The notes beneath the pieces are model-generated. The model did not search any database and was not told the DNA's origin. It saw nothing but the letters and a program-made list of their open reading frames with translations. This document shows positions 6,034-64,000 of a stretch of DNA of 64,000 nt, one piece after another. The position numbers were made by a program, and so were the translations under genes. Each line of letters opens with the position of its first letter. Positions within the stretch are counted from its first letter, which is position 1. The DNA comes from Phaeosaccion multiseriatum. Taxonomy: Eukaryota; Protista; Ochrophyta, other classes. The stretch is from positions 3,534,001 to 3,598,000 of the forward strand of contig OZ218957.1 of NCBI GenBank assembly GCA_965112735.1, written 5' to 3'.

Positions 6034-9000
6034 TTACGCGTCGGCCGCCGCTGCTCCTGCGGCTCCTGCGGCGGCTGCTCCTGCGGGCGCGGCATAGGGC
6101 GCGACGTAGGGCGCAAAGTCCGTGCCAAACGTTGTGCTCACACGCCGTCCGCTGTGGGGCACCTTCTTGATGTCCTCCAAGCTGACGTCGCGCTTCTTTC
6201 GGTCCAGCTGGCCGAACTTGACCCCACCCTGCTTCCAGGCCTCGTTGACGGCGTAGTTGAGCACCATCCAGTCGCGCTTCCCTCCCCAGCTAAGGCTGTA
6301 GCACAGCCCCTTCGTCTTGTTGGTGAGCTTGTCACGCTTGAAGCCTGCGTACAAGCCGCCGGTGAACTCAAGCTCCAGGCCTGTGAGGGTCCAAATGGTG
6401 AGGGGCAGAAGCTTCTGCACGAATGTGAGGCCGCCCACGTCGGTAGAGTAAAGGGAGACGTCGTAGCCGACGCACCCCTTCTCCTCCTCCTTCTCCTCCT
6501 GCTCCTCCTCCCCCTTCTTCTCCTCCTTCTCCTCCTCCTCCTCCTCCTCCTCCTCCTCCACCACCACCACGTCCTCCACCACCTTCTCCCACTCCCACTC
6601 CCCCTCCCCCTCCTCCTCCTCCTCCTCCTCCCACTCCCCCTCCACCACCACCTCCTCCCCCTCCCCCACCACCTCCCCCTCCTCCTCCTCCTCCTCCTCC
6701 TCCTCCTCCTCCTCCTTCGTCTCCTCCGCCCCTCCGTCAGGGTGCACCTTCGGGAGCCCCTGCCCCACGCCACCATCCCCATACACTTGGCCGGCGAAAT
6801 TGACGAGGAAGGCAATGGCGAAGGCCTTGCTCTGGAGCACGTCGCCCTTCGGGTGCCCCGCCATAGCGACGAGAGCGAGGAAACGCTTCCGGTAGTCGAA
6901 GGCGCACCTTGAGTGGCTGCGGTCGTTCCCAAAGAGACAGCACAGGCGCAGGTAGATCTGACCAGAAGCGAAGCAAGCCAAACCAGCAGGAACAAGGATG
7001 GCAAAGGAGTCAGGCAACAAGAGGGGGCGGAGGGAAAAGCAGCACTGGGTAGCTACCTGGGGATCGAGGAAGTGGACACCGGCCATTCGGATTCTGCTGC
7101 GATCCTTCCGAAGGCCACCTTTCTTGATGTAGATGGTGCCCGAGGTGCACTTCAAGAACCCGAGCTCCCTGAACAGGCGCAGTTCCGAGGGGCCCTTCAT
7201 AAGGAAGAGGTTGCACGCTTGCATCCGGTTGCACCCGTCGGTGCAGCTCAAGCCCATCAAAGCAGAGAGCGTGAATCTGCCTGCCGGAGAGCTCATGAAG
7301 CTCCCCCAGGAAAAAGCCTCCTCCGTCTCCACTTTGCTTGGGGGGGCTCTTTTCCACAAGTCCATGAGCAAGAGCATCTCGTTGTTGGTAATATTGGCTC
7401 GCCGCATCCACTTTTGGAAGAAGCGTAACGTCACCTGTGGAGTATGTGTGTCGCGGGAGGGTGACAGTCAGGGGCAGCCTCACGTCAGCGCGTCCATTTC
7501 CGTGTTTCTGACGTGTGCGACACGCATCGCCCCCTCTCTATTTTCGTACTCACAATGTTATGCCGCTTGCGCAATTTGTCCAACTCCCGGCCGCCCGACT
7601 CACTGGGTCCTTGGCCCTCGAAGACGGGGATACCCAGGTCTGCCATGGCCTGCGCCACGATGAGTAGAGCAGCCTGGGGGACGCCCTTCTTCTCCCTAAG
7701 GTACCTGAGGAAGCCTCGCCCAGTGGTCCGGTCACGTTCCTCCTCGGAGATGCGCTGCGGCTGCTGCTGCGGTTGCTCCTCCTCCTGCTGCTGCTGCTGC
7801 GGCCCCTCCTGTGGCTGCTGCGGCCCCTCCTGCGGCTGCTGCAGCTGCTGCAGCTGCTCCTGCTGCGGCGGCCCCTCCTGCTGCTCCTGCTGCTCCTGCT
7901 GCTCCTCCTCGTCGACGGCCCCACCCGAACCCCTGGACCTGGTCTGAATGGCGTTCAGCAGCGGTCGGGGGTACGAGATATAGGCTTGGTCCAGGTTGTA
8001 GTGCACGGCACCCTTCCCCCGCAATCCCTTCACCCTGCAGAAATCGCCAAAGGCTCGCCTGCCCCTCACCACGGTGGAGGACTGAAGGCCCTGCTCCTCC
8101 AAGAATTCATTCGAGGGGAGGAAAAATCTGGCCTCATCGCTTTCGCGGGAAGAGGAGCGGTCGGCGCCTTGGGTCATTGGTCGTAGCAGAGCGGCCGACC
8201 TAGTGGCGTCCTTCCTGGAGTCGTTGCTGTCGATCCCCTCTTGCTGGAGGGTGTCGAGGCCTAAGCCAAGAAGAATGTACGCAGAGTCCACCTCCTCCTG
8301 GGCCACACCACTGTCCGTCGCTAAGGTCTTGTCCAAGAGCAGGGCGTTGTGGGCAATCTGCACGGGAGTCATGCTCGGGTTGTACAGGTCGCCGTCGTAG
8401 AAGGGAAGGACGGCCCCATCAAAGTTGCCTTGATTGCTCCGCGCCGCATTCATGCAAATGCGAATGTCGGGGGTCCGTAGGTCCCCATGCCGAGGGTCCT
8501 GCTGCCTCCGCTCCTCCGGGAGTTGTCCCTCGAGCTCCTCCGGCGCCTTGGGCGAGTTCTTGAAGAACTGAATCGCCGCGTTGAGGTCCAGTCTGCCGTC
8601 GGTGCAGTGGGGGAAATGTGGCGCGCCGTCCCCAAGGTCATGTCCGTTACGGTGGCGGAGCCACATGGCCCAGAGGCCTTGCCACCGTGCCCACTCATCG
8701 TGCGCGGCAATCACGAGCACTTCCCCGCAGTAAGGGCACACCACCTGTTTTTTTGTATGCATTGGGTGGCGGAGGGAGTTGGAGCATGCTTGTTTGTTTC
8801 TGGGCCAAGGCGGTACGTAAAAGCAATGTTCAGCAGTCGACCAACCAACCAACCAACCTACCTTCTCGTGGGGTACTTTGCGGATGCTGTGCCGATGGTC
8901 CGCCACAAGTGTCTCCTCCGTCATGCGCCTGGGGTGAGGCATGCTGTCCTTGCCTCCCTCCGTCATCCTCGGTCCCTCGATCAACTTGTTGGCACTCTCC

Positions 9001-12000
9001 CCGCGAGCCTGTGGTAGGAGCGACGTGTGTGTCTTCACCTCAGAGCCAAGACAGCAGACAGTCAAGACAGCACAGCAGCGCAGCAGACAGCCAAAGCACA
9101 CCCACCTCCACCATGAACTTCCCGGCTTTTCTCTGTGACTTGAAAATGCCGTGGTCGCCATTGCGACCCCTCACCAAGACCGCTAGCCGCTCCAGGGCCA
9201 ACCGGTCTTCTTCATTCGGCAGGGCCTCCTTCATCTCCTCCGAGCTCTTGCCCAGCGAAACAGAGCCCTGGGGGGGGGGGGATGGGGGTTGTTGGTGATG
9301 ATGGAACGCGTGGATGAAATATCAAACACAAGCCTTGGCTCACCTCTTCCTGCTGCTGTGGTGTAGAGCGCGCTTTCTTTCGAAGGGGGGGCTCCTGCCT
9401 CAGACAGACGACCAGCACGACGGGGGGGGAGGGGGATGTGCCGTTGGTCTCATTGGCAGTAGGTGCAAAAGGCCTGTGCCGGGCTTGACTCACCTCCTCC
9501 CACCTCCTCCTGCTCTCTCGCGGATGCATTGGGGGGTTGGGGGGGGGCAGCAGCCTGCACGTGCCTCACCTCCTGCTCCTCCTCCCGCGGAGGCCGGGCA
9601 TCCCTCTGTATGTACGGCACACGACATGAGGTAGTACATTCAGCAAATTGGAAAGAGAGGGAAAACGAGAGGGGGGAAATCCGAAGGGCGAAAAAAAAAA
9701 TTATACCGTCAGATTGGGTATCGCTCACCAGGACACCCCAATAATGTCCACGTAATCTCAGCCAATATGAGGGTGGGACGGGGGGACGAGATAGGGAGAA
9801 GGAGAGAGAGGGGGAGGGAGGGGAGAGGGAGGGGACAGAGAGGGAGGGAGAGTCGAGAAGTGGAGCGAGGGAAGGAGCGAGGGAGAGAGACACACAGAGC
9901 GAGACAGAGAGACACACAGAGCGAGAGCGAGCGACAGCCAGAAGCAACAAGAAGGAGCGAAGCGAGGGCTCACCTCGAGGTTGCTCGCTTGGCGAAGGAC
10001 TTGGTCGAGTTCTTGGGCGACTGCGCGCACGTCCCCCCCGAGACGCAGGGTGGAGATGATGGCCGGGGCGCCGTGGAATCGACGGCCGTGATGCAGGAGG
10101 ATACATTGGCCCAGGGGGGTGGGGTGGGCGCGGGCCCGGTTGAAGAAGCGATGTTCCACAGGTGCGGAGGGCTGGTCCCCGGGCTCGCTCGCGTGTTGCG
10201 AGATGAAAACGAGGGGCTTGCCTAGGCACCACTCGATGGCAGCGAGGGACAAGTCGCTCGGGCCAAGAACACACCAATCCCGCCGCAGGTCATCCACCGT
10301 GGCCTTCTTGAGGAGCAATTCATCGGGCTGTCCTTCTCCTTGGGCGGGGTCGAGGAGAGTCTGCAACGTCTTGAGGAGGATCGGGTCTGCTTGCTTCTCC
10401 ACCATTGTCGCAAGGTCCTTGAGCCATGCTCGAACTTCCGCACCAGTGTCCGCTCCTCCACAGATCTCTCGAGCCCAGGCGAAGCCGTCTTCAGGTCCGG
10501 ACGTACGGTTCAGACTCATGGGCGGGTCCTGGAAGAGAGAGAGCCTCTTGGAGCACCTCAGGGCCCAGGCACGCAGCTGGCATCCGTGGCTGGCTGGGAG
10601 GTTCGCAGCGTACGGGTCACCGAGGGGAGCAAGAGGAGTACTAGAAGAAGCATCCGACTCCGGGTCGTCGTAGCTGGCTCGGTCCATGGCCAAGTGCACC
10701 TGGGCTTCGCTGAGTTCGTTCGGCCCAAAGAAGCGAAGCGCGGCAGCGCATGGCGGTGAGGCGTGGTCGGTGTGGTGGTGGTGGAGCAGAAGGAGGCAAT
10801 CTGCGAGGGGCACTTGCGGGCCAGCTCGGGCAGGTGTAAAGAAGCTGTGCCACACCAGTTGGGGGCAGGGCCCGCTCGAGGTGATGAGCACCGCTGGGAT
10901 TTGGAGTTTCCACTCCAGGCATGCCACCAGAGACTCGCACCCCCTCTGGAATGGACAGTCCGGCGAACGGATTGCTGCCGCAGCCCCCTTGAGCAGGTCA
11001 GCATCGGTGGTCTCGTGCTCAAGGCCTCGACATTGGCGGTCAAAGTGGCGCAGCGTGGTCACCAATCGATTGACCCGGGGCTGCTCCGGCCGCAGGCCGT
11101 CCACCTCGTCCGCCAGCTCGATGCGGAAACCACGGGCTTCTACCTCCGTCAGTTTCGCATCAAAGCCCCTCACGCTGCGCAGAGCCGCATACACCATCGC
11201 GTCCGGCCCGGGCGGCCCCTCGTACAGGTCCATCCCGTTAGCGACCAGTATCTGGGAGATACGATGCTGCCACTTAGCAAGCCCGGTGACTCGAGGTGCT
11301 GCTGCCGTGCTGCTTCCCGCGCTTCCCGTGCCCCGCGGCTGCTGCTGGTCGTTGTCGGCGTTCTGTTGGGCGGAGCGAGGGGCCGAGAGTGAGAGCAAGT
11401 TCTCGTCAGCAAGCAAGCAAGCAGGGATCTAAACCATTATTAGCGCCTCCACAGCAAACAAAGAATACGCTTTCTCACCTTGTGCTCCTCTTCACCCCCG
11501 TCACTGCTGCCGTGCCTCGATCTTTCTGGTGACTCAGCAGCCATAATTGCCGCTCCCCCCGGGCCCCCGCCGGGCGAGCCCCCTGCTCCTCCGCGCTGAT
11601 GGTGGTCGTTCTCGGCGTCCTTTGGAAGAAGGCGGAGGTTGGGCGGAGGGAGGGCGGAGGGAGGGCAAATTCTCGTCAGCAACAAGGCCCTCGACTCGCT
11701 CGGCCGCTCACAGCCACGCGGGCCACACACCGCGCCGGGCCGGACCCGCCCAACGCCGACCAACAAGAAGCAAAGCACAAGCAAGCAAACAAAACCAAAA
11801 ATACACGGTCCTCCTGGCTGTGGCTGGCTGGGAGAGGACGCGCATTCCGCCCCACGGTCTTACTTTCTTACCCTGTGCTCTTCTCTCCCGTCGCTGCTGC
11901 CCCCGTCGCTGTTGTTGCCGTGCTCCGCATCGACCTCGTCGTCGCTGCTCGTGTCCATGACTATGATGGGAATGGTGGAACTTTCTGGGGGGGCGGGTTC

Positions 12001-17730: not shown

Positions 17731-18737
17731 TCGCTAGGGGCAGGAGCTCTTTTGCCTCTCAGATCCTCGCAGTCTCCTCCGTCTCTTCAGCTCCCTCTCT
17801 CAGGCTCTCTCTCTCTCTCTTTTTTTTTCAACTCCTGCAACTGATGGATGCGATTGCGTACCTCCCTACCCCCCCCCCCACTTTCTGTATGCTCATCAGG
17901 CGCAGAGGAAAGTCCGGCGTTACTCTTGGCAGCAGAATGAGATATAAGTAAGCGTCAATGAGGAGGGGAGCGGCGCATCAGTCGCAGGGGCCAGGGAAGC
18001 TAAGGAGCTTTTGGATGCGTTCACCACAATAAAATGTCATCGTTCCGTTCAATCATGGTGCCTCCCTGTCTGGGCAGTGCGTTGCTCGTCTGTGCAGCCA
18101 AGCACCCAGCAGGGGGCGACGGTCCCGATATAGCCGAATAGCTAGCTCAATAATAATTGGAAGAATGTCTCAAGCCCAAAGGGGTTGCTAGGCAGGCCGA
18201 GCAAAAGCCTCTACCGCCCGTCCGTCCTCTCCCTCCTCCAAAAAGTGTGCCGTGTGCGCGCCTCTTGCCTGCCGCGCGCCTGGGTAGCTGTACAAAAAGT
18301 CCCCCCGTGAGCTTGATATGTAGACGCTGTGGGAGTCAGTCGTCCCACTAGCGACACGCCCCAGTCTCTGCGTCGTGACACGTCACCACAAGGAGTAGCG
18401 CCTGCGACGAGGCACGGGGTGGGGGCAGGGTGAAGCGAGCAGCAAGTCTCTCAGCATCACCCACCACACAGCCAGCTCGAGAGAGCCAGCTCGAGAGGCC
18501 AGCAGGCCACAGCACCACAGACTTGCTTACCCCGAGGCGAGCGACGCGTCCGGCGGAGTGGACGACCCCGGGGGGCGCGGCTGCTTCTCAGACTGTGCAC
18601 CAATCAGCCCCTGCTGCGGGGCCAGGCCGGGCTGATTCTCCTTCTGCGCCGTCGAAGAGTAGCGAGCTCCCTGTGCATCGAGGAGGAGAGAGGGAGGGCC
18701 TGAGGCAATCAATCGTCAGAGAGACATTTGCATAGTA

Positions 18738-19664
18738 CTATTTGCGCGGGTGTCGCGCGGCGCGTTTCTGCTGCGGACAAGTCCAGGCCGCACACACTGC
18801 CGCCCCCCGCCCCGAGTAAGATGTGCCCTCCCAAAGCCCGTCCCCGCTCCTGCCTGCCTGCCTTACCTCGTCGGCCGCACCAGCGCCGTGGTCCTCTTCT
18901 AGCGACAAGCGCGAGAGCAGCGATGTCTGCGGCAGAGCGAGGCGAGAAAGGAAAAGCAACACACAGCAGCCAGTGGTGGGGCAAGAGTCAGCAGAGAAAG
19001 AGAGTAGAGACATGTAGCTACCACCACGCACCAGCCCAGGCATTCTGTGAAGCTCGGTGTGTCCCCCGCCCCTGTCTCTGTCTCTGTCTCCCTCCCTCGC
19101 CCGCTGCCGCTGCTGCTCGACGACGTGAGGCTCGGCGTGGTGGGCCGTGGACGCCGCCGGCAGACAAGGCCCCGGCACGCGAGAAAAGCCCGGAGGACAC
19201 TGAGTCTGTCGAGCGGGGTCCAGACGACGGGGGGGAGGAGAAGAGCTTCCGCGCAGAGCGGAGGGGCCCAGCTGCTCGGGCAGGGCGGTGGCCAGAGAAG
19301 CCAGGAGCTCCGAATCGACGTGCGGTGCGTTGTTGCTGGTCCAACTTGCACCCCTTCGATTCTCGTCGGGGGAGTCCCACAGCATCGAGAGCGCCGCAGA
19401 AACACCGAGGTCGAAGGGCGGCACCGCGCTCGGGTCCACGGAGGGGGGGCTGCGCCATGCCCCCGACTCGTCGTGTGTGTGTGTGTGCTCCTCCCCCTTC
19501 ACGCCCCTGGACCAAGCCGTCAAGTTGGAAGAGGCAAGGCCGGGAGAGCAGGCACCGGCAGGACCAGCAGCGTGAGCGGCAGGCATCACATGCTGATGCT
19601 GGTGTCTGTGAGACTCGCCCAAGGGCTGCCTCCCTGACTGCTGGTGCTGCTGGTGCTGCTGGTG

Positions 19665-19715
<51 letters not shown>

Positions 19716-20572
19716 GTGGTGGTAGTGGTGGGGGTAAGGCTGCAGCGGGTGATGAGGTTGGGGGAACCGCTGGGACTGGTGCTGGGGGGGGCGAAGCGGA
19801 GCATTGCTCGAAGGCTGGAACGGTTGCTGGTGCACGTGACGAAAGAGCTGCTGGTGCTGCTGCTGCTGGTGGTGGTGCTGCTGATGGTGGAGATGCTGCT
19901 GGTGCTGGTGCTGCATCTGTTGATGGTGCTGCTGCAGCTGTTGGTGATGGGGAATCTGATGCCGATGGTGATGCTGAGCATACGACAGCGGCATGTTGGT
20001 CGGCAAAGGGTGCAGCGCTGACTGCAGCAATGGGTCACGCTGCTGCTGATGCACGGAGGACGGCACCGCACCGCGGCCGTGCGCATCACAAAGCCCCGGC
20101 CCAGCCCCATGCCATGCCTGCGGGGGGCACTGAGTCAGCGGCCCCGCGCGGAAGGAAGCAAGTCCCATATTCTCCTGACTGGGAGCCTGAGGAGAGGGCT
20201 GCGCGGGGCGAATCGTATCGGTGTGGCGGCGGCAGCAGAGCGGCAGAGCGGCGTGAGGAAGCAGGCAGAGTGAGTGTCAAAGCCCTCGAGTGGCCGCTTT
20301 GCTTACTTGGGGGGAGGGCGGGAGGTGCTCTTCCATCTGTCGGTGGTGCTGGCGAAGCAGGTCCTGATGCCACTCTAGCTCCGCTTGCTCCACGTCGTGC
20401 TCCTCGTGTTCCTGGTGCCTCGTCTCAGATGGCGGGGCGGCTTTCCTCTGCTGCGGCGGCGGGGCCACCCTCCTGCGTCGCCCGACGTAGTGCCATTCTT
20501 CTTCCTGCTGCCTCCCGGCCTCGCTGCCACCCTCACCCTCAATGCTGTTTTGCTCAGATCGACCCCCATCCG

Positions 20573-20606
<34 letters not shown>

Positions 20607-23600
20607 ATGGTAGACGTGGAGCGTTTCCAGCGAAGGGCGATGGACAGAGCGCGACTCATCCAGCACCCCTTCCCCTCCCCCTGCGGCTGTCGCCGATGAG
20701 GCCACTCCCTGGGGGGAAGGCTCGGCGCTGGCCGGGCGTTGCTCGCCGGGGTCCGAGCCGGAGCCGAGCACAGACACCCGCGAGCGAGAAGAGGAGGACG
20801 CAGGAGGGGGGCTTGGAGGAAAGCTCCCCTCGGAGGCGTACGTGGAAGGAGCGCTGGCGTTGTGGGCGCTCTGTCCTGCCGCGGCCATGATGGAGGCCTG
20901 CAGCACGGCGGCGGAGGGCTCTGCGTGGCGGAAGAGCAGCTTGGCCCAGTCGTGCTGGCGGAGGTTCAGGCCGCACTCTCTCATCGTCGCCTGCGTGCGA
21001 GGAGGGCAGATTGTTGGCCCAGCAGGGGAGGAAGCAAAGGAAGGGCTTGAGGGCGGCATACAGCAGGGGAGGCATGTATGTATGTGCAAGTCACTCACAC
21101 ACCTTGAGGTAGTTGTTGAGGCAGTCCCCGAGCTCCGTGGCGCTCTGAATGGAGCGGTCCAAGCGGAGGCAGTGCACGTACGGGAGGGGCGGGGGGGGCG
21201 GGCAGAAGGCCGGCATACCGCTTGCCACCCTCCCTCGGCCTGAGGCGCCCGTGGCGTCCGCAGCGAAGGGTCTGGTTTGAAGCAAAAGACAGACGACGCG
21301 TGATTACGGCCGTGAATCGCTAGTCATAGAGCAGAGCACGACGAGAGAGGAGGGGGGAGGGTTCCGCCCTCGCGCAGGCACGCACCTTTCCTCCTTGACG
21401 GCGCGGACGCCCTTGGAGAACTTGATCATGTTGAGGGCCCCGCGCAGCTTGCTCTTGCTGAAAGGGTTCTTGACCGCCTCCCGCCTGCCCCGCGGCGCGC
21501 CCCCCATCGCCGGCCCCGCCGCCGCCACCCTGCAAGCCGAGCGGTACCTCTGCTCCATCTCGAGGAACAGTATCTCCAGCAGCCGCTTCTCCTCCACCCC
21601 GGGCAGCAAGCGCTCCTTGTCCTGCGAGAGCTGATCGAACACCAGGCGTAGCACCATCTCGTGAAGCGCCACGGGCTGCAAAAAGTCTGCCCCCTTCTTC
21701 CTAATGGCCGCAAGGAAGCCCAGCAGACCGATCACTCGAGCGGGCGGCGCGCGAGGGCCACTGACAGCAGCAGTGGTCAGGGCTGTTGTGGCCTGTTGAC
21801 TCGCGGGCTCTACGCCGCCGCCCTCCTTGCCACCGTCCTCGGGCTTGCTGTCTGGAGGAGTGCTGTTTCGACTGCTGCCGCCATCGCAGCTCGGCGCGGT
21901 GGTGCTCGCCGTGGCGGTGGGGCTTGATGCACGATGATCGTGGGCTGTGCGTGCCGCCGCCACTGCCGCCGCCGACAGTCCAAAGGCGTCCACTAGGGAG
22001 AGCCACAGCCCGTCCCGCTCGCGGCTGTCCATCAGTGCGCGCTCACTCTGCAGCTTGGCTCCTCCCATCACGCTCCCAGGCGCCCACGAGCAGGGCTCGG
22101 TCTCAGAGACAGAGGAGGAAGCGCGGAGGCTCCTCTCTCCGCCGCCGCCACCGCTGTTGCTGGCGTGCAGCATGGGGCACACGTCTCCGAGCTGGCACGG
22201 CGCGTAGCCCGAGGACCCCTGAGTCGTGCAGAAGGCATGCGACAAGTCACGATTGGGATGGAGCGTGGTCTCTAGCCTCTTTCATGGGCAAGCAGAGGAG
22301 ATGAGCTCACCTTGGGGGCCAGCAGCGCCTGCTGGTCGATGAAGCAAATCGTTTTCTTGTAGTTGCTGGGGTGGTAGTGCATCTCCTCGAAGGAGTGCGC
22401 CAGCGGGCACGCCTCGCCCTTGGGGCAGTTGTTGCTGTAGCCCTCACCCTGGGGGGAGAGGGATGAATGGACAGGGTGAGCGAGCATCTCCTCGCGCATG
22501 TCAGGCATTCTCTCCCACACACCTGGTTGGCGAAGACAACGTCGGGGCAGCGGATGGGCGCGTAGTCGATTAGGGCGGGGTTCCTCCTGAGCCAGCCCCC
22601 GTTGAGCTCGTCGTGCGCGAACCAGCACGTCTGCGGTAGGTGGGGGCTGTTGCGGCGGCACACACACGTCCTGGCAGGGGAGGATGGCAATAGAAACAGT
22701 GGGACAGTGCGTAGTTATTGGAGTGTGAGTCCCGCGATTTGGTCGGCAAGGCAAGCAGTGAGCAAAGTCGCAGATGCGGCGCGCGTGCTCTCCTCTCACC
22801 TAAAGATGCCGAGTTGCTCGTCGCTCAGACGGCCGTTCACCGCCACTCCAAGAGACGCGCTTGCTTCTCCTTGAGCCTCCATCGAGGACGTCGAAGGGCC
22901 CGGGGCGGGCAGTGACGGCGCACCTGCAACCACCCTGGCCAAGCTACTGCTGCCGCCGCTACCAGTGTCGACGGTGAGGATGGCAGCCGACGAAGGGCGG
23001 GCCGGCGACGACGTTGCGAGGTGCTGCTCAGCCTCCCCTCCCCCCGCCACGCTACCGGTCGGGCTGTGGGCGCGAGGGATGTAGCGGGGAGGCAGCTGCA
23101 GATCAGGGTAGCGCGCGTGTGCGTCGCTGCCCAGGAACTCCACCCATTCGTCGCGGGAGAGCTGAATGTTGGCGTCTGCGGCGATACGCATCACATAGCG
23201 ACTGAGGAAGGGGGGCGGCGAGGGAGGAGGTCGTTGGGGGGAGTAAGTGGTCTGCAGAGAACAGCCATGAATACATACAAACCCAAACTCTTAGCCCTAT
23301 ACATACCTGTGCATGGCGATCATCTTGTCGACGGAGGTGATCTTGGGCATGAGTGTGAACACGGCCCCGACCCCGCCCATGGCACCCAAGGTCTCGTCCG
23401 GCGCCACCTCCGCGTGCTGCGTGTGGCCCTCGTCTCCCTTCGCGCTGACCCTCGCAACGTCGTGGTGGCACTCACCCTCCTCGTCTCGTTCGTCGTCCTC
23501 CTCGTCTTGCTCCTTCAGGACTTGCTGGCCTACTGAGAACGCCTCTGCCCTTCGCAAGGCGTCGCCGCGCAAGGCCAGCTCCGGGGAGCCCTGCTCTGCC

Positions 23601-32675: not shown

Positions 32676-33590
32676 ATGGAGGGCGGAAGCATGCAGCAGG
32701 CATGTCAATTGATAAACGGCCGCATCAAGAACTATGTGCGGCGGTATCTCTGGACGGCTGTTTCGGCGGGGGGGGTGCTCAACATCCCCCCTCAGGAGTA
32801 CGGCGCCTTCGGCCAGCTGCAGCAGGAGCAGCAGCAGACGATCAATTGGCAGGCCCGCAGCAAGGCGGAGGAGGCAGAGCGCCAGCTGGTGAAGGTGCTA
32901 CAGCTTGAGCTTCGGGACCTGCTGAGACGGGTATGTGACGCGGAGGCAGTCGCCCGGGCATGCCAATTGGAACTGGACATGGTGACCGAGGGGCAGCGGC
33001 GGCGGCAGCACTGGCAGCAAGGCGGCTCGCACTCGCTCCCCACTCCGCCTCCCGACGTGCGGCAGTTGCTGGACGAGAAAGGTGCTCTGATGGCTCAAGT
33101 GGCGGGCCTGGAGGCGAAGCTCGAGAAGCAGCAGCAGCAGCAGCTGGTGATGCAGCAGCAGCAGCGGTGGCGGCAGCAACAGGAGGAGGAGGAGGAGGAG
33201 GAGGAGGAGGAGGAGGAGGAGGAGGAGGAGGAGGAAAAGCAGCAGCAGCAGCAACAGCGACGGTCGCGGCGGTGGTGGCGGGAGGGGCGGGACCACACGG
33301 GGTGCCTCTCCTGCCCGGGTGAGCACAGCCTCCCCGTCCCCAGCTCTACCCTGTACAGTGCCATCCCCAGCTCTACCCTGTACAGTGGGCCTCCCTCTGC
33401 CGCGTCCCCCGACCACACCCCTCCCCCTCCCCGCCCTGCCCGCTCTGCCCATGTGACTCCTCCCTGCGACTCGGGCCCGTGCCTCATGCAAGGAGGGCCT
33501 GCACAGGTCACACCTTCGCCCGCTCGGCACCGCAGCACGGCCTCGGGCCATGACTGTGACACCATGCACGCGATAGGGGGGGGTCGGGAG

Positions 33591-33623
<33 letters not shown>

Positions 33624-34426
33624 GCAGTAGTAGTGACGGGAGAAGGAGGAGCAGCAGCAGCGAGAGTAGCACTGCCGGGCCACCGGCGGAGCCGAGGCTC
33701 GCGCCGCGACTCCTCGAATGGGTACGTCCCCCAACACCGTGCACGTCAGGAGAAGGCGGGGCTCTCCAGCCGCACTCCCTCATATGCCGCTAGTAGGCCA
33801 TCCCATGCCTCCTCATATGCCTCTAGCATGCCGTCCCATGCCTCCAGCGTGGCGCTGCCTCCGAGCGTCTCCAGTGATGATGCACGTGTCCGAGGCATCA
33901 TCGAGCCCTCTGCCTGGGCAGACGGGGCAGACGGGGCAGACGGCAGCTTTGACAGCAGAGGCAGGAGCAGGGGCAGCAGGAGCCGGAGCAGTCAGAGCAG
34001 CAGCAGCAGCAGCAACAGCAACAACAGGAGTAGCAGCAGTAGCGACACCAGCAGCAGCAGCACTCGCACTAGCGGTAGTGCGTCCCTCTGTGGCTGTGGG
34101 TCGGCCTCCCTGACCTCTCTGCAGCCCACTTCCCGCCTCGGACGCCGCCCCATCGGCAGCTCAGTGGCCCGCTCGCGCTCTTCTGCTGGCCTTGGCGGGA
34201 GTCCTCCTGCTTCCCTCCGGAGCTCTCTTGCTGGCTCTCTTGTTGGCTCTCCTGCTGGTTCTCTTGCAGTGGACGGCTCTCTTGCCGTGGAGAGTTCACC
34301 TCCTTCTCTGCCTGCGGCCACCCTGGGTAGTGCCAGTGCCCCCCTGGGCAGTGTCAGCAGTGAGACCACCGCTCGCTTGCCCTTCCAAGACGTGGGCATA
34401 GGCAGGCGAGACGACTCTATCCACAC

Positions 34427-34459
<33 letters not shown>

Positions 34460-35894
34460 GCATTGGGAGCAGCTGGTGAGACAGCAGCAACAATGGGAGG
34501 AGGAGGGGCGGCGGCACCGCCAAAGCCATTCGGGCGAGTCTCAGCAGGAGCAGCAGTTGGTGATAGAGCAGCAGCAGTTGGTGATACAGCAGCTATTGGT
34601 GATGGCGCAGCAGAACGGGGAGGCAGCGGAGGGGAATGACCGCCCGGGGTGGGCCGTGGATGACCTGCAGCAGGAGGTGCGGCGCCTCACACACAGTCAC
34701 AGTCGCGGCTTTGACTCGCATGGGCATGGGGCATTGCTTGGGACAGGGGCAGGGGCATTGCTTGGGGCAGGGGAGCCCTCTCTCGGGTCTGTGCTCGCCA
34801 TGTGTGCCCCACCGGCCTTCCCAAGGGGTGCCTCCCCAGGGGGTGACCGGGGCAGTTCCTGGAACGGGGCCCTAGAGGAGGAGGAGGAGGGGGGGGGGGG
34901 AGGGGGGGAAGAGGGGGAGGAGGACGAGCGTCAGCGGGAGGAGCAGGAGAAAGAGCAGCATCAGCAGCGGGAAGAAGAGGAGCAGGAGGGGAGGCGGCGG
35001 CGCCGTCGCCATTGGGAGTCGCGTGAATCACCACCTGCTGCACCTGCTGGCCATCCAACTCGAACCAATCCCAGTGAAGATGGCGGCATGACCACCGCCT
35101 GTGCGCTCTCTCCATCGCTCCATGACGAGGAGAGGCAGGGGGGGCGGGGAGAGAGGGGCAGGAGCAGCCGGCACGAAGGGATGGAGAAAGAGGAAGAGGA
35201 AGAGGAAGAGGAGGTGGGGCTGCAGCGGGAGGAGCGACGGGGCGGGAACGATGGAGGCGAGGAGGATCCCCCTGAAGAGCGCCCACCCGGTGACGTGAGG
35301 ATTTCGGCGCAGCAGCTACGGCTCCAGGAGCTGAGCCAAGACGGAGGCGGATACAGCACTGATCACTGTCTTACTCGTGGGCGTGCTGACGAGGGCAGAG
35401 GAAGCGTGATGCCTCGCTCCTCGGCTTACTCGTCTTGCTCGTCCGCTTGCTCGTCCGTGTCTCTGCAGCTGCTGGAGGAGCTCGAGGGGTTGGACTTCGG
35501 CAGCGACAGCGGCGGCGGAGACAGCGAAGAGAGTTTCGACAGAGGAGGAGCAGGTGGAGAAGGGAGGGCAGGGATAGCGCAATGGGCCACCACCAGCTGG
35601 CACCGCCATTGCAGGGGGAGGGGGGAGGAGCAGAAGGGGGGGGGGGGGGGTGGGGATGGCATTGGGGATAGTGATGGGTATGGTGGTGGGGATGTTGGTG
35701 GTCCGCCCCTCCGAGAAGCTATGCCTCTGAGGCGGAGGCGTCGTAGCAGCTTGTTCGGCGCCGTGCAGGCCTCTGATCTCGAGCGGCGGCAGGAGGAGGT
35801 GAGAGAGGTGATGGCTGCTCGCGACGAGGAGGGACACCAGCAGGCTCTCCAGCAGCAGCAACAGCAGCAACAGCAGCAGCAACAGCAGGCATAG
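32676..35894 (+). CDS. Hypothetical low-complexity coiled-coil protein (may contain introns)
   Basis: 1072-codon ORF with Q/E/S runs and a coiled-coil-like N-terminal part; no recognisable domain. Confidence 0.5.
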
Positions 35895-60084: not shown

Positions 60085-63000
60085 ATGACCCCTGAGGAGC
60101 TTCCGATAGTCCGTTGTTACAACTTAGCAAGTAGTGACGAAGTTCGGGAAGGGACTTGGAAGAAAATAGCCTCCTTTTTATTTAGTGTTTTCTTCGAGTA
60201 CCCCTGGAAGGTGGTGACGGGGTGGAGGAAAAGGAGGAGGAAAGAGGTTACGCGCGAAGAGCAGCATTTGGAGCCCCCAAAGAAGAAAGCAAGAGCTGGC
60301 GACCACAGCAGCAGCAGCAGCAGCGGCAGCTGTAGCAGTCGCAGCGGGGGCGGGGGGAGCGGCGAAGGGCCCGATGAAAATGTGGAGGAGGAGGGGGTGG
60401 AGTCGGCACGGCATGAGGATGTGGGCCACACCGAAGCGGGACAGCAGCGAAGCAGCAGCGGCAGCGGCAGTAGCAGCGGGGGGAGCGGCGAAGGGCCCGA
60501 TGAAAATGTGGAGGAGGAGGGGGTGGAGTTGCATGGGGATGTGGGCCCTGAGGAGCAACACGCCGAAGCGGGACAGCAGCGAAGCAGCAGCGGCAGCGGC
60601 AGCAGCAGCGGGGGCGGCGGGGGGACCGGCGAAGGGCCCGATGACAATGTGGAGCAGGAGGGGGTGGAGTTGGCACGGCATGAGGATGTGGGCCCTGGGG
60701 CGTCGAAGAAGAAGAAGAGGAGGAAGACGGGAAGCGGAAGAGGGGGGGGGAAGAAACGCAAGAGGAGGGGGGGGGGGGGCAGCGGCAGCAGCAGCGGCAG
60801 CAGCAGCGGCAGCTGTAGTCGCAGCGGAGGCGGGGGCAGCGGCGAAGGGCAGGACGAACAGCCTGAAGATGAAGACTCTCTGTATCTCCAGGTACGTGCG
60901 AATGAATGTAAGGACTACGAGTACATTTCCCCCCCTTTTTTGGGCTTGTTCTCCCTCCTCTTTCTTGCAGTTGCTGACTCGCTCCTATCCTCCTACCCCT
61001 CCTTGTTGTACCGTTCTGTCTCAGCTATGTCGCCAACCCAAGGAGCTGTTGGCAAAACTGGAGAGCATGCTTAAAGATGTCGAAGCAGGGCTTAAAGATG
61101 ATGTCGAAGCAGGAAACCGTAGGCCTACCCATCTGCCTCTGGGGCTGGCGAACATCATCAGACTTGCCATAGGGTGGGGTCGGATTAGGGAAAGGGGCTG
61201 GTGCACCGTACGGGTGCAAAGCATTGACCTCATGGACGATGTTGGTCGCTTTCATGCCTACGCGGAGGTGGCCATGCCCTTGTACGAGTGGTGGAAAAAC
61301 AATCCCGACTCCGCTGTCGACGACACAGACGACACGTTCTCCTGCTGTGAGGAGGAGTTGGACATCCCCGATGGGGTGCGGGAGGAGCTCGAGCGGGGCA
61401 GCCGAGGTGAGCAGTCTCATGCATTCCTGTACGGGGGGGATGCAGGGGACAAGGCGAGAGCCGCGCAGCTCAAGGATGCCGAAGGCAATGTCGTTCGAGA
61501 GCATGTTCCGGGGCCGCCCCCGAGTGGACCGGACCCCGACAAACAAGCTGCTCAACAGCGGCTGCGTGGCCAGTTAGAGGCGTTAGGGGAGAAGCAGCTC
61601 GAGGATTGGCGGAACATTTCTCCGGAATCCAGGGCGGAAGCGCGAGCGCTCCTTCGACAACATGCGGCCGTCACAGGGGCTATGAATGAGGGAGACCTTG
61701 GGATTGGCCTAGACACGCTGGTGGGCAGAGCTATGAAGGCGATGCAGGAATCGGGGAGGTACGAGCTGTTCTTCGCCCAGCATCGCGCTGGCTCAGGGGA
61801 AGTTATGGGGAGGGTGTTCAACGACCAAGGACTAGAGTGCATGGCCAGGAACAAGGGGTTGCTGCCAGCCGGGCCAGACGAACTCGGTCAGCTACTGAAG
61901 CCTGGGCCCTTCAACGTTGGGCTGTCGGACGGGCCAACAACTACGTCGTCTACATCACGCGCGGGGAGTGGTTTGCTCTACCGCCTCATCTGGACCGTCG
62001 ACCCCCAGAAGCTTCTTGACGCGCTCGAGACGGAGGAGCTCAAGAGGGAGGTCGAGTTGCACCTTAGTGCATGGGCAAAGCAAAGGTGAGGTAGAAATAG
62101 AATACGGGAGTAGGGGGCGTTATCATTTACCTCCCGTTACATGCTGGTCGTTTATTTCCATTCGCGCAAACCTCACCCCGCCGCTCTCCACTTCCTTCTC
62201 TTTTCGACCCCAGGGTGAATGAGTTGAGGTCAGCAGCAGCAGGGGCAGTGGAACAAGGGGAAGCAGAAATGCGCTTAGTGTACACTGGAATCTCAGGGGA
62301 CACCGACCACCGCAGATACCGCAAGGAAATGGAGGCGGACTGGTCCTCTGTGAGTACAAAGGATGGCACTCAGCCGCCCATGCTTCAGGTAGCAAGGCAG
62401 GCCGCTGGAGACGCACCCCACACGTACAACCACGTGACCGTCGAGGACATGCCCACCACCCTCGCAGCGGAGCAGCTCTGTGTGGCAGGCACAGAGTCAG
62501 CACGGCGTATTTTCACCCTCAACCTCGCCCCAGGAGGGCAAACGGGATGGTGGGGGGAGGATAAATGGATTCAGGTGCTCTGCTGCTTGGTCCGTAGGGG
62601 AACGCCCATATCGCAGTTGCCCTTGCCTTTTCAACACTGGTGTGAGACTGTGGGGGTCGCAGATATTCGTGTGCTGCACAGAATAGTCTCTTCGTCCGGC
62701 GGTAAAAACGGCGGTGAGTACATGTTTGTTTCGTGAGTGAGTGAGTGGGGGCAAAGCAAGTAGTGGTAGTGGGGGGAAACCGGGGCCGTGGCGTGGCGGC
62801 GAATCCAAGTTCAAAGTAGTTAGGTACGAGCAAGGTACCACGTCACATTTGTTATATTTGCTCACTGCCCCCCCTCGCTTCCCGTATGCCCTCGGTGTCT
62901 ACTTTTTATACTTCAGCCACCAAGTGCAGCGAGTGTGGTGGCAATGAGAATGAGCCACCCCTCAACGGGTGTAAGAAGGTACATGGTGTCTCCAGAGGTA

Positions 63001-64000
63001 AGGCTGTTTCGTGAGTGAGTGAGTGGGGGCAAAGCAAGTAGTGGTAGTGGGGGGAAACCGGGGCCGTGGCGTGGCGGCGAATCCAAGTTCAAAGTAGTTA
63101 GGTACGAGCAAGTTGTAGCGGTATATAAGGAGTCATTGGCTCGCTATAGACCATTCAGCGCGTGGGTAGTGGGGGGAAACCGGGGCCGTGGCGTGGCGGC
63201 GAATCCAAGTTCAAAGTAGTTAGGTACGAGCAAGGTACCACGTCACATTTGGTATATTTGCTCACTGCCCCCCCTCGCTTCCCGTATGCCCTCGGTGTCT
63301 ACTTTTTATACTTCAGCCACCAAGTGCAGCGAGTGTGGTGGCAATGAGAATGAGCCACCCCTCAACGGGTGTAAGAAGGTACATGGTGTCTCCAGAGGTA
63401 AGGCTGTTTCGTGAGTGAGTGAGTGGGGGCAAAGCAAGTAGTGGTAGTGGGGGGAAACCGGGGCCGTGGCGTGGCGGCGAATCCAAGTTCAAAGTAGTTA
63501 GGTACGAGCAAGTGCAATTGCTTTCCGCATGCCATCCGGAAACTACTTTTAGTTGTGAGGATTGGGGGGGCCAGAGTCTTACCCCCCCCCCCCCCATTGA
63601 ACATGCCCAACTCTTTGCTTGTCGTGCTCTGGCAGGCGCAAAGGTGTACGCACCGGGCGAGACCACGGCAGGCGGGATCGTGTCGAAGGGGACGAGGCAA
63701 GGCAAATCCAACGGCGGTAAAAACGGCGGTGAGTACATGTTTGTTTCGTGAGTGAGTGAGTGGGGGCAAAGCAAGTAGTGGTAGTGGGGGGAAACCGGGG
63801 CCGTGGCGTGGCGGCGAATCCAAGTTCAAAGTAGTTTGTTACGAGCAAGTGCAATTGCTTTCCGCATGCCCTCCGGAAACTACTTTTAGTTGTGAGGATT
63901 GGGGGGGCCAGAGTCTTACCCCCCCCCCCCCCATTGAACATGCCCAACTCTTTGCTTGTCGTGCTCTTACAGGCGCAAAGGTGTACGCACCGGGCGAGAC
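60085..64000 (+). CDS. Multi-exon protein: acidic/Ser repeats, unknown shared domain, GIY-YIG endonuclease, modular C-terminal exon array (gene B; runs off the window)
   Basis: Exons 60085-60891, 61025-62085, 62214-62713, 62917-62997, 63317-63397, 63636-63728 and 63973->64000 are all GT-AG and in frame. GLLYRLIW...LVYTGISGDTDHRRYRKE...AAEQLC...TLNLAPGG matches GIY...YIG...R...E...YNxxPGG. Confidence 0.7.
62697..64000 (+). repeat. Complex tandem array of exon+intron units (periods ~400 and 337 bp)
   Basis: The block gtgagtgagtgagtgggggcaaagcaagtagtggtagtggggggaaaccggggccgtggcgtggcggcgaatccaagttcaaagtag recurs at ~62733, 63012, 63411 and 63748 (partial at ~63165). Confidence 0.95.

What the first reader, a model, noticed from the sequence alone, without database searches (positions are those of the whole stretch)
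62714..64000. C-terminal module array built by tandem duplication of symmetric phase-1 exons after the GIY-YIG domain
The tandem repeats hide clean phase-1/phase-1 exons. The 81-nt exons 62917-62997 and 63317-63397 encode (A)TKCSECGGNENEPPLNGCKKVHGVSR, a CxxC-x11-CxxxH zinc-finger-like unit. The 93-nt exon 63636-63728 and its copy from 63973 encode GAKVYAPGETTAGGIVSKGTRQGKSNGGKNG. The introns share a common 5' block, which would allow unequal crossover or exon skipping. Established knowledge: GIY-YIG homing endonucleases carry modular C-terminal DNA-binding units (zinc fingers, NUMODs). Inference: an exon-shuffling mechanism that could vary target specificity or length.
Basis: partly seen in the sequence, partly recalled or inferred. 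Interest (0 to 1): 0.78.

Follow-up and report, generated by a model that had tools for sequence, protein, structure and literature searches.

The report
Young tandem exon-intron duplications, orphan gene
The 3' part of a lineage-specific algal gene with no detectable relatives holds very recent tandem copies of two small exon-plus-intron cassettes. This is an ordinary way for genes to grow, and nothing supports the proposed nuclease, zinc-finger or specificity-switching story.

Summary
The sequence observation holds. Two identical 81-nt segments and a 93-nt segment, with a second copy cut by the window end, each sit between a pyrimidine-rich CAG acceptor and a consensus GT donor. All are open in phase 1, in frame with the phase-1 donor of the upstream exon at 62713/62714. 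Every intervening intron starts with the same 108-115-nt block. The array is two nested tandem duplications: period 400 with 1 difference in 348 nt, and period 337 with 5 in 259 nt.

The upstream exons match no GIY-YIG profile or any other family in Pfam, PHROGs or PDB sequences, and have no relatives in 1.84 billion representatives, metagenome contigs or viral contigs. The folds are unusable (pLDDT 35-39). The Cys/His unit matches no zinc-finger profile. The copies are too young to show selection.

The 93-nt exon looks like a by-product of duplication: its last 17 nt, donor and intron start copy the end of exon 3.

Unchecked notes from this scan list many similar exon-plus-intron duplications elsewhere in this genome. 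Best reading: recent, probably near-neutral gene growth by unequal crossover or slippage. Interest is low.

The parts
60085..60891 (+). Putative exon 1. It starts at an ATG in a CACC-ATG-A context and ends in phase 0 before GTACGT. It holds Ser/Gly/acidic coding repeats and a Lys/Arg-rich stretch.
   Evidence: ORF; sequence; TRF periods 126/141. The codon score favours this frame (+22 against negative values in the other five frames).
61025..62085 (+). Putative exon 2, 353 full codons, ending in phase 2 before GTGAGG. Orphan sequence.
   Evidence: Open frame. The codon score favours this frame (+28). No family or relative found. AF2 pLDDT is 39.
62214..62713 (+). Putative exon 3, ending in phase 1 before GTGAGT at 62714. 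If the donor is not used, the frame stops at TGA 62734-62736.
   Evidence: No family or relative found. AF2 pLDDT is 35.
62714..62834 (+). Constant intron-start block C, copy 1 (donor GTGAGT, then the shared block). It contains (GTGA)3, which gives three further GTGAGT motifs and a TGA in all three frames.
62835..62916 (+). Block X1, copy 1: intron 3' part with a pyrimidine tract and CAG acceptor.
62917..62997 (+). 81-nt Cys/His candidate exon, copy 1 (phase 1/1).
   Evidence: No Pfam or PDB match.
62998..63112 (+). Block C, copy 2, with its own donor GTAAGG. The shared block starts 8 nt into the intron.
63113..63164 (+). Unique 52-nt segment U, lying between a full C block and a partial one.
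   Evidence: Single copy in the window. No notable fold.
63165..63234 (+). Partial C block: the 3' 70 nt only.
63235..63316 (+). Block X1, copy 2. It has one substitution against copy 1 (63252 G against 62852 T).
63317..63397 (+). 81-nt Cys/His candidate exon, copy 2, identical to copy 1.
63398..63512 (+). Block C, copy 3 (donor GTAAGG).
63513..63635 (+). Block X2, copy 1: intron 3' part with a C14 run and CAG acceptor.
63636..63728 (+). 93-nt Gly/Lys-rich candidate exon, copy 1 (phase 1/1). Its last 17 nt equal the last 17 nt of exon 3.
   Evidence: (positions 77-93 match 62697-62713).
63729..63849 (+). Block C, copy 4 (donor GTGAGT, as after exon 3). It has two substitutions.
63850..63972 (+). 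Block X2, copy 2. It has three substitutions, two of them at positions -5 and -4 of the acceptor.
63973..64000 (+). Start of the second copy of the 93-nt candidate exon, cut by the window end.

Best explanation
A lineage-restricted (orphan) multi-exon gene of a GC-rich alga has undergone very recent, nested tandem duplications in its 3' part. The gene runs 60085-62713 and beyond. The duplications probably arose by unequal crossover or replication slippage between copies of a roughly 110-nt intron-start block.

Each duplicated unit carries a small exon with its acceptor and donor. The exons are 81 and 93 nt and every junction is phase 1, so any number of units keeps the reading frame and the duplications are tolerated. 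The predicted result is a protein tail that gains repeated 27-residue Cys/His-containing units and 31-residue Gly/Lys-rich units.

The 93-nt exon is probably a chimera produced by a 337-bp duplication that spanned an intron: 76 nt from the start of the original downstream exon plus the last 17 nt of exon 3.

Shown: the repeat anatomy, the near-identity of copies, the splice-site consensus, the frame compatibility and the lack of any relatives.

Inferred: that the units are actually spliced in, the duplication mechanism, and that the event is near-neutral gene growth rather than an adaptive module system.
For: Repeat anatomy:
- Period 400 (99%) and period 337 (98%).
- The constant core occurs 5 times against 0 expected.
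- All six differences between copies are intronic substitutions, 1 in 348 and 5 in 259. The copies are therefore real but very young.

Exon and splice signals:
- Exon 3's last 17 nt, its donor and the C block recur at the end of the 93-nt exon.
The first strong donors after them give in-frame, open units.
- The 81-nt unit has its own GTAAGG donor, which is not a copy of exon 3's donor.
- The upstream exons are phase-consistent and favoured by the codon score.

What is absent:
- No terminal inverted repeats and no copies elsewhere in the window, so this is not an obvious transposon.
- No Rfam family and no stable fold for the constant block.

Context: unchecked notes of this scan list many exon-plus-intron tandem duplications in this genome.
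Against:
- Open 27-31-codon stretches are common in this window (0.54-0.58), so frame openness is weak evidence (joint chance about 0.035).
- The codon score has no power on the micro-exons.
- Without splicing, exon 3 stops seven codons after the donor, so the gene could simply end there.
- The array runs off the window, so its end and the downstream exon were not seen.
Confidence: 0.55

Rival explanations
1. The array is a young intronic or 3'-flank minisatellite and the 'exons' are pseudo-exons. The gene either ends at TGA 62734-62736 or splices from 62713 across the whole array to a distal exon. None of the 81- or 93-nt units reaches the mature mRNA.
For: - Read-through from exon 3, and from every unit, stops within 6-7 codons at the (GTGA)3 motif.
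- Open short frames are common here.
- The codon score of the 81-nt unit is neutral (-0.2).
- An earlier follow-up reports a satellite-filled intron elsewhere in this genome (unchecked).
Against: - Both unit types have a consensus acceptor and donor exactly at the ends of multiple-of-3 open segments, in the phase set by exon 3's donor.
- The 81-nt unit carries its own independent donor.
Confidence: 0.3
2. The units are modular DNA-binding cassettes (zinc-finger-like and basic) at the C-terminus of a GIY-YIG endonuclease. Exon shuffling or skipping among them varies target specificity or reach.
For: - The C-x2-C-x11-C-x3-H spacing could bind a metal ion.
- The 31-residue unit is Gly/Lys/Arg-rich.
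- Exon 1 has a Lys/Arg-rich stretch that looks like a nuclear signal.
- All junctions are phase 1, so any combination stays in frame.
Against: - No GIY-YIG or related profile hit at E<=1, no PDB relative, and no relatives at all.
- The motif-like strings are 57 residues apart (counted by hand on the translations).
- No zinc-finger profile or PDB match for the unit.
- The copies are identical, so there are no variants to choose among.
- No complementary docking or selector sequences.
Confidence: 0.04
3. This is an assembly artefact. A single exon-intron unit of each kind was spuriously duplicated, or a longer array was collapsed, by the assembler.
For: Near-identical tandem units of 337-400 bp at 98-99.7% identity are hard to assemble. 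The stretch also holds homopolymer runs such as C14.
Against: - The copies differ by six substitutions, not homopolymer indels.
- The array contains a unique 52-nt insert and a partial block.
- The two unit types are interleaved in an ordered way.
Confidence: 0.06

Closest known systems
Tandem exon duplication in eukaryotic genes (reviewed in PMC3342872; human cases in PMC8373072; exon creation in PMC2592719)
   Same: Exon and flanking intron are copied head to tail. Exon lengths are multiples of 3 with symmetric phases, so the frame is kept. Splice sites are copied with the exon.
   Different: The well-studied cases are old, diverged copies, often used as mutually exclusive alternatives. Here the copies are 98-100% identical, belong to two unrelated exon types, would add to each other rather than replace each other, and their expression is unknown.
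Phase 1-1 module shuffling in metazoan multidomain proteins (Patthy's exon-shuffling rule; from my own knowledge, not checked in a paper here)
   Same: Symmetric phase-1 exons can be inserted or repeated without breaking the frame.
   Different: Those modules are folded domains of 40 or more residues with recognisable families. These units are 27 and 31 residues with no family match.
Modular GIY-YIG homing endonucleases such as I-TevI, with a catalytic domain, a linker with a zinc finger, and a DNA-binding domain (from my own knowledge)
   Same: Only the idea of small C-terminal units following an N-terminal body.
   Different: No GIY-YIG profile match, abnormal motif spacing, no NUMOD or zinc-finger profile, and a spliced nuclear gene rather than an intron-borne or free-standing phage or organelle ORF.
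Dscam-type mutually exclusive exon clusters with docking and selector RNA pairing (from my own knowledge; related mechanisms in PMC7797038)
   Same: A constant intronic element recurs beside each cassette exon.
   Different: No complementary partner for the constant block, the block itself is not structured, and the cassettes are identical copies or unrelated types, not variants of one exon.
Introner-like elements that seed near-identical introns in some algae (from my own knowledge)
   Same: Several introns share a long near-identical block.
   Different: Copies occur only inside this local tandem array. There are none elsewhere in the 64-kb window and no terminal inverted repeats. The sharing is explained by local duplication.

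Membership tests
GIY-YIG nuclease superfamily | Significant match to a GIY-YIG-type sequence profile (Pfam GIY-YIG clan, phage homing-endonuclease families) | tested here: not met
   Pfam at E<=1 gives only chance-level hits to unrelated families for exons 2 and 3. PHROGs at E<=1 gives none with a nuclease annotation. PDB sequences at E<=10 give no nuclease.
GIY-YIG nuclease superfamily | GIY and YIG strands forming a hairpin, about 10-11 residues apart | tested here: not met
   The LLY string at the end of exon 2 and the VYTG string in exon 3 are separated by 57 residues and an intron (counted by hand on the translations).
GIY-YIG nuclease superfamily | Alpha/beta fold with conserved Arg, Glu and Asn placed at the active site | tested here: inconclusive
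Single-sequence AF2 models have pLDDT 34.6 and 39.4 and are unusable. With no relatives, no alignment could be built.
Zinc-finger / NUMOD-type DNA-binding modules | Match to a zinc-finger or NUMOD profile or to a solved structure | tested here: not met
   No Pfam family at E<=10 for either unit. No PDB sequence at E<=10 for the Cys/His unit.
Zinc-finger / NUMOD-type DNA-binding modules | Four metal ligands in a plausible spacing | tested here: met
   C-x2-C-x11-C-x3-H is present in both copies. This is a pattern only; metal binding was not tested.
Zinc-finger / NUMOD-type DNA-binding modules | Ligands conserved among diverged copies or relatives | not testable with these tools
   The two copies are identical and no relatives exist in any collection searched.
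Tandem exon duplication array | Head-to-tail copies of exon plus flanking intron | tested here: met
Tandem exon duplication array | Frame-preserving exons (multiple of 3, same phase at both ends) with retained GT-AG sites | tested here: met
   Units of 81 and 93 nt, phase 1/1, with CAG acceptors and GTAAGG or GTGAGT donors.
Tandem exon duplication array | Exons present in mature transcripts | not testable with these tools
Mutually exclusive exon cluster | Alternative exons that are diverged homologues of equal length, with competing RNA pairings | tested here: not met
   The copies are identical, and the two types are unrelated and of different length. Only one weak 13-nt inverted repeat was found in the region.
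Transposon-derived (introner or MITE) introns | Terminal inverted repeats or target duplications, and dispersed copies | tested here: not met
   No terminal inverted repeats. No copies outside 62714-64000 in the window. The rest of the genome could not be searched.

The most novel reading that the evidence does not exclude
The array is a copy-number-unstable cassette system. The identical intron-start blocks, each with three extra consensus donors, would drive both frequent unequal crossover between individuals and stochastic inclusion or skipping of the 27- and 31-residue units. The cell population would then make a protein tail of variable length and Cys/His content.
Probability: 0.08. Interest if true: 0.5.

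Novelty: new member of a known kind. Interest (0 to 1): 0.2.

Why it matters
If the units are spliced in, this is a snapshot of gene growth caught almost at the moment of duplication (0.3-2% divergence). It includes a likely example of a new exon made by a duplication that spans an intron. That is useful as one data point on how orphan genes in this alga lengthen, and it matches what the scan has noted elsewhere in the genome. It does not reveal a new mechanism, a nuclease or a specificity-switching device.

Tried and rejected
- Word searches: exon 2, exon 3 and exon 2 inside the 571-aa open frame, which widens the length range, were all blank.
- Exhaustive HMMER search with exon 3: five hits, all repetitive bacterial proteins with many weak stretches. 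I judged them spurious after reading them.
- Contig scans: two metagenome scans and one viral scan were blank.
- Family and structure-sequence searches: Pfam, PHROGs and PDB sequences were blank or at chance level. The protein Atlas gave NAD_binding_4 at 0.92 with recognition below the cut-off, treated as chance, and nothing for exon 2.
- Folds: AF2 models of exons 2 and 3 were too poor for a fold search.
- RNA-gene idea for the constant block: Rfam was blank and the fold is no better than shuffles.
- Transposon idea: no inverted repeats and no dispersed copies.
- Codon-usage likelihood: trained on the window's long open frames, it separates the frames of exons 1-3 but has no power on 27-31 codons.
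- Splice-site training set: a Pfam scan of the ten longest open frames gave no hits, so the simple site rule is generic rather than genome-specific.
- X1 against X2: a 31-nt similarity scored 25 against shuffles of 15.8 +/- 2.4 (maximum 27), which is marginal.
- The exons were handled one by one by reference.
Full report
**Observation**

The window is GC-rich (54-67%) eukaryotic DNA with GT-AG introns.

- Segments 62917-62997 and 63317-63397 are identical 81-nt stretches. With one base carried over from the previous exon they encode A-TKCSECGGNENEPPLNGCKKVHGVSR, a C-x2-C-x11-C-x3-H pattern.
- Segment 63636-63728 (93 nt) encodes the 31-residue Gly/Lys-rich unit. A second copy starts at 63973 and is cut by the window end.
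- TRF reports a 400-nt period at 99%.
- The repeat finder reports a 259-nt pair 337 nt apart at 98%, and five copies of a 70-nt core. A 42-mer of that core occurs five times against zero expected.

**Anatomy**

The upstream gene model is phase-consistent.

| Part | Coordinates | Boundary |
|---|---|---|
| Exon 1 | 60085-60891 | phase 0, then GTACGT |
| Exon 2 | 61025-62085 | phase 2, then GTGAGG |
| Exon 3 | 62214-62713 | phase 1, then GTGAGT |

A codon score trained on the window's long open frames favours exactly these frames (+22, +28 and +8.5, against negative values in all other frames).

After exon 3 the order of parts is as follows:

1. C, X1, 81-nt exon
2. C, U, partial C, X1, 81-nt exon
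3. C, X2, 93-nt exon
4. C, X2, 93-nt exon (cut by the window end)

- C is a 108-115-nt block at the start of every intron. It contains (GTGA)3, which supplies three more GTGAGT motifs and a TGA in each frame.
- X1 and X2 are the two intron 3' parts that carry the acceptors.
- U is a unique 52-nt insert.

The last 17 nt of the 93-nt exon, its donor and the C block that follows are a copy of the last 17 nt of exon 3, its donor and its C block. This is what a 337-bp tandem duplication running from inside exon 3, across the intron, to base 76 of the next exon would produce. The result is a new exon of 76 + 17 = 93 nt. The 81-nt exon instead has its own donor (GTAAGG), and the shared block starts 8 nt into that intron.

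**Is it more than chance?**

The first strong donor after each gives 81 or 93 nt, both multiples of three and open in phase 1.

Open short frames are common in this window, however. 58% of 27-codon stretches and 54% of 31-codon stretches are open. The joint chance of the two units being in-frame multiples of three is therefore about 0.035. This is suggestive, not decisive. The codon score has no power on such short pieces.

**Age and selection**

The 400-nt units differ at 1 of 348 positions and the 337-nt units at 5 of 259. All six differences are intronic substitutions. With about 126 exonic bases compared, only about 1.5 exonic differences would be expected. The absence of exonic changes therefore says nothing about selection.

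The substitutions, the unique insert and the partial block argue mildly against a plain assembly stutter.

**What the gene is**

Nothing identifies it.

- Pfam gives only chance-level hits for exons 1-3, and PHROGs likewise.
- PDB sequences give no relative.
- Three word searches are blank, including one that used the 571-aa open frame to widen the length range.
- The exhaustive search of 1.84 billion representatives with exon 3 returned five hits. All are repetitive bacterial proteins matched in many weak stretches, which I read as spurious.
- Two metagenome scans and one viral scan found no relative.
- The protein Atlas gave a below-threshold lead (NAD_binding_4) for exon 3 and nothing for exon 2.
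- Single-sequence AF2 models have pLDDT 34.6 and 39.4, so no fold search was run.

The GIY-like string (LLY, end of exon 2) and the YIG-like string (VYTG, exon 3) are 57 residues apart rather than about 10-11. The nuclease label therefore rests on motifs only. Earlier follow-ups of this scan reached the same verdict for other 'GIY-YIG-like' calls in this genome (unchecked notes, not evidence).

The 27- and 31-residue units match no Pfam family even at E<=10. The Cys/His unit matches no PDB chain.

Every exon was searched and folded separately by reference.

**Other readings tested**

- RNA gene: the constant block is not a known RNA (Rfam blank) and folds no better than shuffles (z = +1.6).
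- Transposon: there are no terminal inverted repeats and no copies of any array part elsewhere in the window. A transposon or introner origin is not indicated, though the rest of the genome could not be searched.
- Docking/selector mechanism: the constant block has no complementary partner that could support one.

**What could not be done**

Splicing, transcript ends and assembly correctness therefore remain untested. The array runs off the window, so its length and the downstream exon are unseen.

**Verdict**

The GIY-YIG context, the zinc-finger or DNA-binding nature of the units, and the specificity-varying mechanism are not supported.

| Reading | Probability |
|---|---|
| Young, nested exon-plus-intron tandem duplications in the 3' part of an orphan gene, tolerated because every junction is phase 1 | 0.55 |
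| Array is intronic or downstream and never reaches the mRNA | 0.30 |
| Assembly artefact | 0.06 |

Unchecked notes of this scan list many similar exon-plus-intron duplications elsewhere in this genome. The scan has therefore seen this kind of thing before on other DNA of the same organism. Tandem exon duplication is a well-known route of gene growth (PMC3342872, PMC8373072, PMC2592719). Novelty: a new member of a known kind. Interest is low.

Noticed in passing
window 60305-60694 and 60705-60775: Exon 1 itself contains about 2.9 coding tandem repeats of 126/141 nt at 76-80% identity, giving Ser/Gly-rich then acidic units. A Lys/Arg-rich stretch follows that looks like a nuclear localisation signal. 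The same gene therefore also grew by older internal duplication at its 5' end.
   Followed up: partly
window 62733-62746, 63011-63024, 63411-63424, 63748-63761: Each constant block carries (GTGA)3 followed by a G5 run, 13-21 nt after the exon donor. This gives three extra consensus GTGAGT donors and a TGA in all three frames. It could act as a decoy or backup donor cluster and stops any intron-retained message. Function untested.
   Followed up: partly
window 62971 and 63371: An internal GTAAGA inside the 81-nt unit would give an alternative 54-nt in-frame exon that lacks the KKVHGVSR end, and so lacks the His of the Cys/His pattern.
   Followed up: no
whole window (ten longest open frames, e.g. 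32676-35891 +, 18728-20887 +, 7488-9161 -): None of the ten longest open frames (363-1072 aa) has any Pfam match at E<=0.001. The window appears dense in coding-like sequence without known families.
   Followed up: partly
window 63419-63751: The frame of the 93-nt unit stays open for 72 codons upstream, through X2 and most of the constant block, giving a 110-aa open frame. This is probably a composition effect of the G-rich intron. It means an upstream alternative acceptor would also stay open.
   Followed up: no
window 62877-62907 vs 63520-63550: X1 and X2 share a 31-nt stretch at about 77% identity just before or inside their acceptor regions. The alignment score is 25, against shuffles of 15.8 +/- 2.4 (maximum 27). 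This is a marginal hint that the two cassette types descend from one older unit.
   Followed up: partly
window 63580-63593 and many other sites: Long C or G homopolymer runs (13-17 nt) recur all over the window, shown by the many short BLAST hits of X2 positions 66-85. This is a genome-wide feature and could trouble assembly and read mapping.
   Followed up: no
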